The notes: a model not told the origin generated them from the sequence alone. A stretch of 63,956 bases of DNA, filler included, from Reticulomyxa filosa (GCA_000512085.1; 25 parts of 25 records of this genome joined end to end with filler, not necessarily neighbours in it), one strand, 5' to 3'; shown: positions 55,785-58,801, counted from the whole stretch's first letter. Numbers and translations: made by a program.

Positions 55785-56180
55785 CAATACTGGAATCGAT
55801 ATGCCATATCCAGATAATAATTCTGGGTTGTTTTTAAAACCCTTGTAAGTGTATCCCAATATCAGACACATACACATTACACAACATAAAAAGGTTATTG
55901 CCACACACAATAGTAGTTCGTCCGTTGTCTTCATGTGGTATAATTGAGTCATCTTCCAAATAGTGAGTCAAATTATTGACCTTTTTGTTCCTCAAACTGG
56001 TCCAAAAATCAAAACGACACAATCCACAAAAATATTGTTGCAAGCTTTCAATCTTTCTTTTATTATCTCGGGTTATTACTACCTTTCCACTTTTGGCATC
56101 GAAGAGGCAATTATAATGGACAATTTGCTTTGTCCCCTTTCTGTTGAGGTTGTCCCCGTACTGTGCAATTGCTGTGTATA
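55785..56180 (-). CDS. Membrane protein fragment
   Basis: Hydrophobic segment LLLCVAITFLCCVMCMCLILGYTY running into the contig end. Confidence 0.35.
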
Positions 56181-56518
56181 AAAACGAGTTTTTTGTTTAG
56201 TTGGTTTTTTTGGCAGGAAAATGCTCGATGTGAAAAATGTAAGTGTGGTACTGTTTATTATATGAAAAAGATATCAAACGAATTACTTTTGCATGATCGA
56301 TAAAGTCATCACGTGTGTTGCTAATAACACGACACACCACCAGCCTTTTTATGGCAAGGTGAACCAATAAAAGACACAAGTTTCCCTCAATAACACAAAA
56401 CGCGAAAGAAAAACCAGCTGAAAATAAAAAGGCAATAAGGCTTTTACATGTTTATTTTTCAACAAGAAAACGGATGTAGATCCATGGTACTCATCTGTTT
56501 ATTCTCATTGATTGACGT

Positions 56519-58627
56519 TTACATCACAAAACACGATTCAGGAGTCTATGCAAGTCACAAGATTAGTTACAATTGATTATTAAAAAAACAGGGAAAAGAG
56601 TAAAAAAAAAAGTGTTGTCATGGTTTCACGAAACAAATCCTGGAGTATTTGCAGGAATTGGGATGATAGCAAGTTTATGTCGGAAATTTAATTCATCTTC
56701 GACCCAAAGTTCATGTTTGTCTCCTTTCTTAAGTTTTAAGCCTTTCCACAACAAATCCGTTTGCTCTTTCGCGTTGTCGGTCAAACAAACACGAATAATG
56801 TCCTCTGTACACAAAACATAATATAACATTTATCAATACATTAAATATTTCGACAAAGCGGAAAAGCGAAAGGGGAAAGAGGAAAAAAAAGAACGTGATG
56901 AAGGTACGAATAATATTTGTCATGTAAAACAGTTTAATATAACTCGGGTTTAATCTCTTTTCCGGCAAAGACAAGCGCGATGTTTGTTCCGTGTCTGTCA
57001 ACGACCAGCCTTTCAAGATGATTGGTTTATTCCATTGATTTTGCAATTCAAATCCAATCCAATCACCTTCGTACTGTCGAGTTATGCACTCCAATGGGAA
57101 AATAAGATTACTGTCAATTATAGGTCCTTTCACTGATTTCAACACTTTCGCTTCCTTTTTTTGTCATTTGCGCATTTTTTTTTTTTTTACAACCTCGCCC
57201 GCAACATCCATGTGAATATACATCCCCTCCTTTTTTTTTTTCACAACACAAACCATCAGAGTTGAATCAGTACGCCGACGTTTTTTTGAAGGGACAGGAC
57301 TTCTAATGTGATACTTTTCTTCGAACATGTCCAGTTTTTCTTTCAATTTCTGTTATTGACAAAAAAAGTGCATAACACAAATAATATGATAAATGTATAC
57401 ACTTACATAGACATATATTATCTATATTCGTTGGGATGTATATAGAAATTAATGTGATATTCACCTTTTTTTTTTTAAATGTTTGAATTTGCACAAAATT
57501 ATATAATATACGGACAAGCTCAATTATTTACCTCAATTTCATTTCGTAAATCGATATTGCCTTTTTCCACTGTAGTTTTTTCGTCTAAAATTTTTGCTTT
57601 TCTTTTTCTAATTCGTCTACTTTGCTCTTCCAATTTTTCGCATCAGTCTTTTGTTTGTCCAAATCGCTTTTGAGGGCTTCGCGAAGTGGTTTCTAGCGTA
57701 TTTGTGTTTGTTTATTTTTGCAGAGATAAAGTGTACATTATATGTATATTGCGGTGCATTTGTTTAAGGTTTTAGCGTTATATTGTGTTTGTTTGAGTAT
57801 TTAATTTGTTCCCTAAAGACAAAAAAAAATTCCCGAAATTTCGCGTATGGATTGGCGGCAAAAAAAAAAAAGACCTCTCTTTCCAAGTCTTTCAAAGCCT
57901 GTTCTTTTTCTTGCTCAGTTTTTTGTAAATCCTTTTCCAAGTCGGTGATTCTTTTGGTTTGATCATCAACCGTAATGGTCAAGTCTTTGATTTGTTTGGC
58001 CAAGCCATTTTCCAAATTATCCAGTTTCGTTTGGTACATATCTTCCATTTTTTTTTTGAAAAGGTTGTGGTTCTCTTCTTGCTCTTCTAATGCCTATCAA
58101 AATTATATTATTTGGCAATTTGAGCACCAAAGATTCGTGTTTCAAAAAAAAAAAAAAGTCGTTTATCTTTAAGCAACACAAACAAGCAAATAATTCACAC
58201 CTCAGCCAATTGGGCAGCATATTTTTTCTGCAAAGTGCCTTCCGAGTCACCCAACCCTGATTTCAATTGCGCGTTTTCATTGGCCAGTGCTTTGTTTTCT
58301 TCTTCCAAAGCCTTCATTCGCAAGTCAGTCGCGTATTTCAAGTCTTGAATGTCTTGCGCAAGCTTTTACCATTTACAAACAGCCAACGTCTCATCCCATT
58401 TGTATTTCGTTTTAGAGGGGAGGGATTGTAGTGGCATCCAAATTTGGACACCATTTTACATTTGCACACTCAAAAAAAAAACAAAAACAAAACGCAACTC
58501 GGTCTTTTTCTCGAAGGACGTGGCCTTTCTCATTTTTTAGAGTAGCATTATCTTTTTTCACATTATTAAGTTTGGAGTTTGTATCTTGTAAATCCTGTTC
58601 CAATAGCAAAGTTTTTCTATTTGCCAA
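56519..58627 (-). CDS. Nuclear lamin-like protein (coiled-coil rod, SP site, NLS, lamin-tail-like domain, CaaX), 5'-truncated
   Basis: Spliced: rod exons 58627-57532, 57349-57254 (KLKEKLDMFEEKYHIRSPVPSKKRRRT), 57154-56944 (FELQNQWNKPIILKGWSLTD), 56804-56635 and 56545-56519 (TPESCFVM*). The last four introns are GT-AG and frame-compatible. One +1 homopolymer correction is needed at ~57593. Confidence 0.85.
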
Positions 58628-58801
58628 GTAATTTTTTTTTTTTTTTTTNNNNNNNNNNNNNNNNNNNNNNNNNNNNNNNNNNNNNNNNNNNNTTAATTAA
58701 TTAANNNNNNNNNNNNNNNNNNNNNNNNNNNNNNNNNNNNNNNNNNNNTCTTGCAAAACCAAAATAGAAACATCTACATACATATATACTTCATTTTAGA
58801 G

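What the first reader, a model, noticed from the sequence alone, without database searches (positions are those of the whole stretch)
56519..58627. Hidden lamin-like gene in a probable rhizarian (foraminiferan), with a CaaX box on a 27-nt terminal exon
The ORF track shows only fragments. Manual splicing gives, in order: a heptad coiled-coil rod; a rod end NIDLRNEIE|KLKEKLDMFEEK that aligns with the lamin/IF consensus LDMEIHAYRKLLEGEE; an SP site right after it (RSPVP, CDK1-like); a basic NLS KKRRR; an Ig-like lamin-tail motif (FELQN...IILKGWSLTD...IRV...DLLWK); and, across an 89-nt phase-0 intron (56634-56546, branch-like CTAAT), the tail TPESCFVM*, a CaaX farnesylation box. This is the full B-type lamin arrangement. 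Non-metazoan lamins are known (e.g. Dictyostelium NE81 and some SAR lineages). An automated annotation would probably miss this one or lose the CaaX because of the tiny exon and a homopolymer frameshift. It bears on the origin of the nuclear lamina.
Basis: partly seen in the sequence, partly recalled or inferred. Interest (0 to 1): 0.9.

Follow-up and report, generated by a model that had tools for sequence, protein, structure and literature searches.

The report
Mis-annotated lamin-like gene in Reticulomyxa
The piece is a whole small contig of the foraminiferan Reticulomyxa filosa carrying most of a real, spliced lamin-like gene (coiled-coil rod, nuclear-import signal, lamin-type Ig tail, lipid-anchor CaaX box on a 27-base last exon) that GenBank holds as a garbled "viral A-type inclusion protein" without the CaaX, and that belongs to a compact foraminiferan family absent from the published lists of protist lamins.

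Summary
On the minus strand, eight exons (58630-56519) separated by seven GT..AG introns of 89-182 nt tile an alignment of intron-free relatives with no gap at any junction.

The piece is the entire 2,864-bp R. filosa contig. Its deposited model, ETO12114.1, reads through three introns, loses most of exon 4 around a homopolymer frame break, and stops at GFVS without the CaaX.

The tail is a lamin-type Ig fold. In Foldseek, 16 of the top 17 PDB hits are lamin A/C, B1 or B2, and hhalign against Pfam-verified LTD segments gives 96.6%. Pfam's own LTD threshold is not reached. A relative's model does show a three-part rod like that of an IF protein.

Rhizarian lamins, including seven R. filosa fragments, were published in 2016, but neither this gene nor its three paralogs are among them. 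The verdict is a new, divergent member of a known kind, of moderate interest. The 5' third of the gene lies off the contig, and no transcript of this exact gene was found.

The parts
58632..58648 (-). A17 homopolymer at the contig edge. The assembly ends here. The deposited model translates it as KKKKK, but it is probably not coding.
58499..58630 (-). Exon 1 (partial; 5' boundary undetermined). It encodes part of coil 1B of the rod. About 130 residues upstream of it are off the contig.
58201..58362 (-). Exon 2: end of coil 1B, the Gly/Ser-containing L12-like linker and the start of coil 2. Introns 1 (58498-58363) and 2 (58200-58094) flank it, both GT..AG.
57875..58093 (-). Exon 3: coil 2. Intron 3 is 57874-57693.
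57532..57692 (-). Exon 4: coil 2. It carries a 1-nt frame break inside the A5/T4 run 57595-57587, with an in-frame TAG at 57587-57585 as the sequence stands. The family alignment runs through the break without a gap. Intron 4 is 57531-57350.
57254..57349 (-). Exon 5: rod end, the SP site (Ser-Pro codons 57301-57296) and the basic NLS KKRRR (57286-57272). Intron 5 is 57253-57155.
56944..57154 (-). Exon 6 (ends in phase 1): first half of the lamin-tail-type Ig domain. The beta-sandwich core starts at about 57094. Intron 6 is 56943-56805.
56635..56804 (-). Exon 7: second half of the Ig domain (core ends at about 56659), ending in the conserved Gly-Phe. The deposited model reads on into intron 7 and stops at GFVS (TGA 56628-56626).
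56546..56634 (-). Intron 7: 89 nt, phase 0, GT..AG, with CTAAT 21 nt before the acceptor. At 29% its GC matches the intron average of 30%; the exons average 38%.
56519..56545 (-). Exon 8: a 27-nt terminal exon of eight codons plus TAA. The CaaX box Cys-Phe-Val-Met is at 56533-56522 and the stop at 56521-56519.
56498..56503 (-). AATAAA 16 nt after the stop of exon 8. It is a candidate polyadenylation signal, by motif only.

Best explanation
This is the 3' two-thirds (about 392 codons) of a functional, seven-intron R. filosa gene for a compact lamin-like protein. Most likely the protein dimerises through its coiled-coil rod. It would be imported into the nucleus through the KKRRR signal that follows the rod, then farnesylated on the C-terminal Cys-Phe-Val-Met box and so tethered to the inner nuclear membrane, with the lamin-type Ig domain facing chromatin or partner proteins. 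The conserved Ser-Pro next to the rod end is a candidate mitotic-kinase site for disassembly.

Shown here: the gene structure, family conservation of every motif, the LTD-type fold of the tail, and the mis-annotation. Inferred only: nuclear-envelope location, prenylation, phosphorylation and filament formation.

The frame break in exon 4 is most simply a homopolymer miscount in the draft assembly. The gene belongs to a family of at least four R. filosa paralogs and at least six intron-free environmental relatives. This family is distinct from the long-tailed foraminiferan lamins already published.
For: - Exons and junctions.
- Identity of the contig and of the deposited model ETO12114.1.
- CaaX continuation in six relatives (P0002, P0041, P0042, P0003, P0031/P0004, P0045). 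Its statistical distinctness.
- SP, KKRRR and the CaaX residues Cys, Phe and Met are invariant in A7.
- Tail fold: AF2 of the relative P0002:370-523 gives pLDDT 76.6 and a beta-sandwich. In Foldseek, 16 of the top 17 PDB hits are lamin Ig domains, with E 3e-4 to 4e-3 and TM by target 0.49-0.61.
- The exon-6 phmmer search hits many-LTD bacterial proteins. hhalign of the tail family against Pfam-defined LTD segments gives 96.6%, E 6e-10.
- Rod layout in the relative: helices 48-80, 90-200 and 214-369 with two short breaks, then a disordered linker.
- Intron positions are shared with paralog loci L001 and L002.
Against: - No sequence-level link of the rod to IF or lamin rods.
- Pfam LTD scores are 13.3 and 18.8 bits against a 34.3-bit threshold.
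- The best non-family hits of exon 6 are bacterial LTD proteins, not eukaryotic lamins.
- As deposited, the sequence has a frame break with a stop.
- No transcript of this exact gene was found.
- The N-terminal third is missing.
- The paralog loci show no intact CaaX exon.
- The structure was predicted for a 64-69% identical relative, not for the joined window protein.
Confidence: 0.78

Rival explanations
1. This particular copy is a young pseudogene of the family. On this reading the frame break in exon 4 is real and only other copies are functional.
For: There is an in-frame TAG at 57587-57585 as the sequence stands. The R. filosa paralog loci show what look like decayed CaaX exons: L001 has a ...CFMM stretch that is out of phase and without a stop (shuffle P = 0.036), and L002 has a Ser in place of the Cys (P about 0.1). 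The family therefore seems to tolerate decay.
Against: This is the only defect in about 392 codons. It sits in an A5/T4 run, and the alignment resumes with no residue lost. All seven introns keep GT..AG. This copy alone keeps an intact in-phase CaaX exon, 7 of 8 residues identical to P0041.
Confidence: 0.12
2. It is a coiled-coil plus LTD protein that is not a lamin by descent. The same domains would have been assembled independently, and the protein may work at another prenyl-targeted membrane rather than as a nuclear lamina filament.
For: The rod has no detectable sequence similarity to IF or lamin rods. The nearest sequence neighbours of the LTD outside the family are bacterial. Coil 1B in the relative is about 111 residues; from my own knowledge a lamin's is about 143. 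R. filosa already has canonical lamins (PMC5630835 supplement).
Against: The order rod, SP, monopartite NLS, Ig domain, CaaX is the lamin order. The fold hits are specifically lamin Ig domains rather than generic Ig folds. The rod in the model has the 1A / L1 / 1B / L12 / coil 2 layout, with about 33, 111 and 156 residues. An invariant NLS argues for a nuclear role.
Confidence: 0.1
3. The GenBank name is right and this is a relative of poxvirus A-type inclusion proteins.
For: Only the deposited names of ETO12114.1 and ETO36362.1.
Against: No poxvirus A-type inclusion family appears in any Pfam scan of the exons or of the relatives. Such names are commonly transferred through low-complexity coiled-coil similarity (my own knowledge). 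A third paralog is named 'GTPase' with no GTPase domain found.
Confidence: 0

Closest known systems
Published rhizarian/foraminiferan lamins: Koreny & Field 2016, Table S1 (R. filosa ETO28743, ETO24379, ETO09514, ETO02958, ETO17410, ETO27405, ETN99247; Elphidium; Ammonia), and Kollmar 2015 (Corallomyxa)
   Same: Same organism group. Coiled-coil rod, basic NLS after the rod, Ig-like LTD, and a C-terminal CaaX of similar type (CFIM, CFVM, CLFM and CLIM in the published ones; CFVM here).
   Different: The accessions differ, and none of ETO12114, ETO36362, ETO31167 or ETO14276 is listed. The published ones have a recognisable IF-type rod end and a long, low-complexity linker of well over 100 residues between the NLS and the LTD. 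Here the LTD follows the NLS within about 25 residues, and the CaaX follows the fold within about 15. A direct alignment with them was not run, because I had no tool-given reference for their sequences.
Metazoan B-type lamins (LMNB1/LMNB2)
   Same: The order of parts is the same: rod, SP/CDK-type site, monopartite NLS, Ig-fold tail, farnesylatable CaaX ending in Met. The predicted tail fold matches the lamin B1, B2 and A/C Ig domains best among all PDB chains.
   Different: Identity over the Ig domain is 13-17%. The rod is about 320 residues with a 1B of about 111, against about 350 and 143 in lamins (the lamin figures are my own knowledge). There is no Pfam Filament match. Pfam LTD is below threshold.
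Dictyostelium NE81
   Same: A non-metazoan lamin-like protein defined by rod + CDK1 site + NLS + CaaX, with experimentally shown nuclear-envelope location (PMC6406624 and PMC7464662, abstracts seen).
   Different: No sequence comparison was run here. The present family has a clear LTD-type fold in its tail. Nothing experimental exists for it.
Bacterial LTD-containing surface or secreted proteins (Pfam PF00932 repeats, some with CotH or Por secretion tails)
   Same: They are the closest sequence neighbours of exon 6 outside the family, with phmmer E values down to 4e-11 summed over repeats. hhalign gives 96.6%.
   Different: They have no coiled-coil rod, NLS or CaaX, and carry tandem LTD repeats in extracellular proteins. 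They share the domain, not the architecture.

Membership tests
Nuclear lamins (type V intermediate-filament proteins, as defined for protists by Koreny & Field 2016 and Kollmar 2015) | Long central alpha-helical rod with the IF segment layout (1A, L1, 1B, L12, coil 2) | tested here: inconclusive
   The AF2 monomer model of the full-length relative P0002 has helices 48-80, 90-200 and 214-369 with breaks of 9 and 13 residues. The window covers only part of 1B onward. Heptad periodicity on the window exons is weak in my crude test. No dimer model or coiled-coil predictor was available.
Nuclear lamins | Sequence similarity of the rod to IF rods (Pfam Filament PF00038; conserved motifs at rod start and rod end) | tested here: not met
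   No Filament hit for any exon (E <= 10) or any relative (E <= 0.1). Profiles of the whole rod, the rod end and the rod start retrieve no lamin or vimentin chain from the PDB. One keratin 2B fragment aligns at the wrong place with E = 0.013. The by-eye resemblance to the consensus motifs remains, but it is not a test.
Nuclear lamins | Nuclear localisation signal directly after the rod | tested here: met
   KKRRR at 57286-57272. K-R-R-R is invariant in the six relatives. This is a motif only; import was not tested.
Nuclear lamins | CDK1-type Ser/Thr-Pro site flanking the rod | tested here: met
   Ser-Pro is invariant nine to ten residues after the rod end in all members. The full S-P-x-R form occurs in P0002, P0003, P0041 and P0045; the window has the minimal S-P. 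The N-terminal flank is off the contig.
Nuclear lamins | Ig-fold lamin tail domain | tested here: met
   In Foldseek, 16 of the top 17 PDB matches are lamin A/C, B1 or B2 Ig domains, all with prob 1.00, on a model with pLDDT 76.6. hhalign against Pfam-verified LTDs gives 96.6%. This was done on a natural relative, with the window exons as separate alignment rows.
Nuclear lamins | C-terminal CaaX prenylation box | tested here: met
   Cys-Phe-Val-Met followed by TAA on exon 8. The splice is supported by six relatives that read straight through the junction. No transcript of this copy was available.
Nuclear lamins | Reverse search returns lamins as best hits (the criterion used in PMC5630835) | tested here: not met
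   With exon 6 alone as the query, the best hits outside the family are bacterial LTD proteins and no eukaryotic lamin is listed. This is a limited test, because the joined protein was not searched.
Nuclear lamins | Location at the inner nuclear membrane and assembly into filaments | not testable with these tools
   Needs localisation and assembly experiments.
Pfam LTD (PF00932) | Score at or above the curated gathering threshold (34.3 bits) | tested here: not met
   13.3 bits for exon 6 (E = 0.11) and 18.8 bits for P0003 (E = 0.0021). P0002 has no hit at E <= 0.1. The domain is split over two exons in the window, which lowers the per-exon score.
Poxvirus A-type inclusion protein (the deposited name) | Match to a poxvirus A-type inclusion protein family model | tested here: not met
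   No such family appears in the Pfam scans.

The most novel reading that the evidence does not exclude
Foraminifera carry a second, previously unrecognised lamin lineage. [quoted passage not shown] It sits beside the canonical long-tailed lamins. In R. filosa it has expanded into several paralogs, some of which have lost the CaaX exon. That would be a protist parallel to the metazoan path from membrane-anchored lamins to CaaX-less or cytoplasmic IF proteins.
Probability: 0.3. Interest if true: 0.65.

Novelty: new member of a known kind. Interest (0 to 1): 0.5.

Why it matters
Lamins outside animals are central to the argument that the last eukaryotic common ancestor already had a lamina. This gene does not change that argument, because rhizarian lamins are already on record.

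It does show three things. A whole compact lamin-like family in foraminifera was missed by the surveys. Draft annotation hid its defining CaaX box and gave its members misleading names ('viral A-type inclusion protein', 'GTPase'). And R. filosa, a giant multinucleate cell, may run two different lamin-type systems.

It also gives a concrete correction for ETO12114.1 and a set of intron-free relatives from which full-length constructs could be designed.

Tried and rejected
- A word-index search with exon 6 alone found nothing, because only candidates within the 38-122 aa length window are considered.
- Exact-sequence look-ups of two mechanical ORFs found nothing.
- phmmer of exons 6 and 7 against the PDB gave none and noise respectively.
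- The tail-family profile against PDB sequences gave only laccase noise at E about 0.2.
- The rod, rod-end and rod-start profiles against the PDB gave generic coiled coils or noise and no lamin.
- The search for a near-identical transcript-derived protein of this gene found none. The closest is 69% identical.
- The CaaX exon in the three R. filosa paralog loci is not intact in any of them. The two DNA-level remnants are only weakly above chance.
- The metagenome scan with the tail family returned only the contig of P0045. An earlier attempt failed because partial rows were in the alignment.
- The downstream open frame has no Pfam, PDB or metagenome relatives.
- Rfam, tRNA and tandem-repeat scans of the piece found nothing beyond homopolymer runs.
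- The R. filosa genome paper is not held, so the sequencing platform could not be checked.
- One phmmer hit, P0021 (E 9.8e-4), is a CLIP-domain protein, not an LTD, and was discarded as a false positive.

Full report
**What the piece is.** Positions 55785-58648 are AT-rich (GC 0.25-0.44 in 200-nt windows) and carry only short mechanical ORFs. An exhaustive HMMER search with exon 6 returned a 430-residue protein that is 100% identical over the exon (P0001). The cluster look-up identifies it as ETO12114.1, 'viral A-type inclusion protein, partial [Reticulomyxa filosa]', seen on one contig of 2,864 bp, which is exactly the length of this piece. The gene is not strictly hidden, because an automated model of it is public.

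**Gene structure.** On the minus strand I map eight exons:
- E1: 58630-58499 (5' end open)
- E2: 58362-58201
- E3: 58093-57875
- E4: 57692-57532
- E5: 57349-57254
- E6: 56944-57154 (ends in phase 1)
- E7: 56804-56635
- E8: 56545-56519

The seven introns are 89-182 nt long and all are GT..AG. Intron GC is 0.30 against 0.38 for the exons. tblastn of two intron-free relatives against the window breaks at the same coordinates, and the paralog loci L001 and L002 break at the same protein positions, so the intron positions are conserved within the family. In alignment A1 the exons, entered as separate rows, tile the relatives end to end with no gap at any junction.

**The frame break.** Exon 4 changes frame inside an A5/T4 run (57595-57587) and, as deposited, meets a TAG at 57587-57585. 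The family alignment continues on the other side without losing or gaining a residue. A single-base homopolymer miscount would produce exactly this. I could not check the sequencing platform, because the genome paper is not held. A real mutation, meaning a young pseudogene, remains possible, and I give it about 0.12.

**The deposited model compared with this map.** P0001 starts by translating the A17 run at the contig edge. It retains parts of introns 1, 3 and 5 as 13, about 33 and 21 extra residues. It drops the first two-thirds of exon 4 to get round the frame break. It reads through the donor of intron 7 and ends at GFVS (compared).

**The terminal micro-exon.** Six relatives encoded by uninterrupted ORFs (P0002, P0041, P0042, P0003, P0031/P0004, P0045) continue from the conserved Gly-Phe into eight more residues that end in Cys-Phe-Val/Leu-Met and a stop. 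P0002, P0041 and P0003 were checked to be encoded without interruption on 1.7-1.9-kb contigs. The window's E8 matches P0041 at 7 of 8 residues. E8 begins directly after an AG in phase 0, and it is the only one of the 24 stop-terminated 8-codon stretches downstream that matches better than 2 of 8. Only 1 of 2000 shuffles reaches 5 of 8. An AATAAA lies 16 nt after its stop. No transcript of this exact gene exists in the collections, so the splice is supported by comparison and has not been observed directly.

**The tail domain.** Per exon, Pfam gives only LTD at E = 0.11 on exon 6. On the relative P0003 it gives E = 0.0021. Both are below the 34.3-bit threshold, and P0002 shows no hit at all. 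Three other lines agree, however:
1. The exon-6 search also finds bacterial proteins that Pfam scores as strong multi-LTD proteins.
2. hhalign of the tail family (A2) against Pfam-delimited LTD segments of those proteins (A6) gives 96.6% probability and E = 6e-10 over 77 columns.
3. An AlphaFold2 model of the tail of the natural relative P0002, with window exons 6 and 7 as separate alignment rows, has mean pLDDT 76.6 and is a beta-sandwich. Foldseek against the PDB returns lamin A/C, B1 or B2 Ig domains as 16 of the top 17 matches, with prob 1.00, E 3e-4 to 4e-3 and TM by target 0.49-0.61. The non-lamin chains that follow (ranks 18-50) have TM by target of 0.13-0.53; the one non-lamin chain among the top 17, an archaeal pilin at rank 9, has 0.45.

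**The rod.** The exons are rich in Glu, Lys, Gln and Leu and poor in Pro and Gly, and they show a/d enrichment. My simple periodicity test gives P below 0.05 for only one exon piece. The AF2 model of full-length P0002 shows three helices of 33, 111 and 156 residues separated by breaks of 9 and 13 residues. These are followed by a disordered stretch of about 30 residues that holds the SP site and the NLS, then the beta-sandwich, then a floppy C-terminus. That is the 1A / L1 / 1B / L12 / coil 2 pattern of IF proteins, with a 1B nearer the cytoplasmic-IF length than the lamin length (the reference lengths are my own knowledge).

At the sequence level nothing ties the rod to IF proteins. There is no Pfam Filament hit. 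No lamin or vimentin chain is retrieved by profiles of the whole rod, the rod end or the rod start.

**Motifs.** Ser-Pro, K-R-R-R and the CaaX residues Cys, Phe and Met are invariant among the six complete tails. Four relatives have the full S-P-x-R form, while the window has a minimal S-P.

**Relation to what is known.** Kollmar 2015 (PMC4448529) and Koreny & Field 2016 (PMC5630835) established lamins in Rhizaria. The 2016 supplement lists seven R. filosa fragments plus Elphidium and Ammonia lamins. All have a long linker before the LTD and CaaX boxes such as CLFM, CLIM, CFIM and CFVM. ETO12114 and its paralogs ETO36362 ('viral A-type inclusion protein'), ETO31167 ('GTPase') and ETO14276 ('hypothetical') are not among them. 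No paper in the searchable library mentions Reticulomyxa or foraminifera together with lamins in its main text. The gene is best filed as a new, divergent member of a known kind.

**What was left out.** The joined protein was never built, searched or folded. The published foraminiferan lamin sequences were not typed into tools, so there is no direct alignment or tree with them.

**Verdict.** I put 0.78 on a real lamin-like, probably nuclear-envelope, prenylated protein gene that is mis-annotated in GenBank. Novelty is moderate and interest is 0.5.

Noticed in passing
window 55837-56196, minus strand: A 120-codon open frame lies downstream of the lamin-like gene and runs almost to the contig end. 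It has no ATG at its start. The frame upstream of it (56197-56379) is the same frame, separated by a single stop. No Pfam, PDB or metagenome relative was found. It may be part of a neighbouring gene, or it may be chance.
   Followed up: partly
L001:5288-5307, L002:4745-4760, L003: The three other R. filosa paralogs (ETO31167.1 'GTPase', ETO36362.1 'viral A-type inclusion protein', ETO14276.1) also have models that run past or stop before the family's C-terminus. L001 keeps the GQF|gt donor and has a ...CFMM stretch about 160 nt downstream, but out of phase and without a stop. L002 has a similar stretch with Ser in place of Cys. Both are only weakly above chance (P = 0.036 and about 0.1). This could be CaaX loss in the paralogs or errors in the draft assembly.
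   Followed up: partly
window 58632-58648 and introns (e.g. 58471-58493): The contig ends in an A17 run, and the introns are full of A/T homopolymers of 10 or more bases. The assembly probably broke in one, which is why the 5' third of the gene is missing.
   Followed up: no
P0002 model, corresponding to window exons E1-E2: Coil 1B of the family is about 111 residues, nearer to vertebrate cytoplasmic IF proteins than to lamins. The L12-like break falls in the Gly/Ser stretch that exon 2 encodes.
   Followed up: partly
L006:2-463 and 535-1572: The JGI contig that encodes P0003 has a second gene call of 153 residues just upstream on the same strand. This is probably the same transcript split by a frameshift in the contig.
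   Followed up: no
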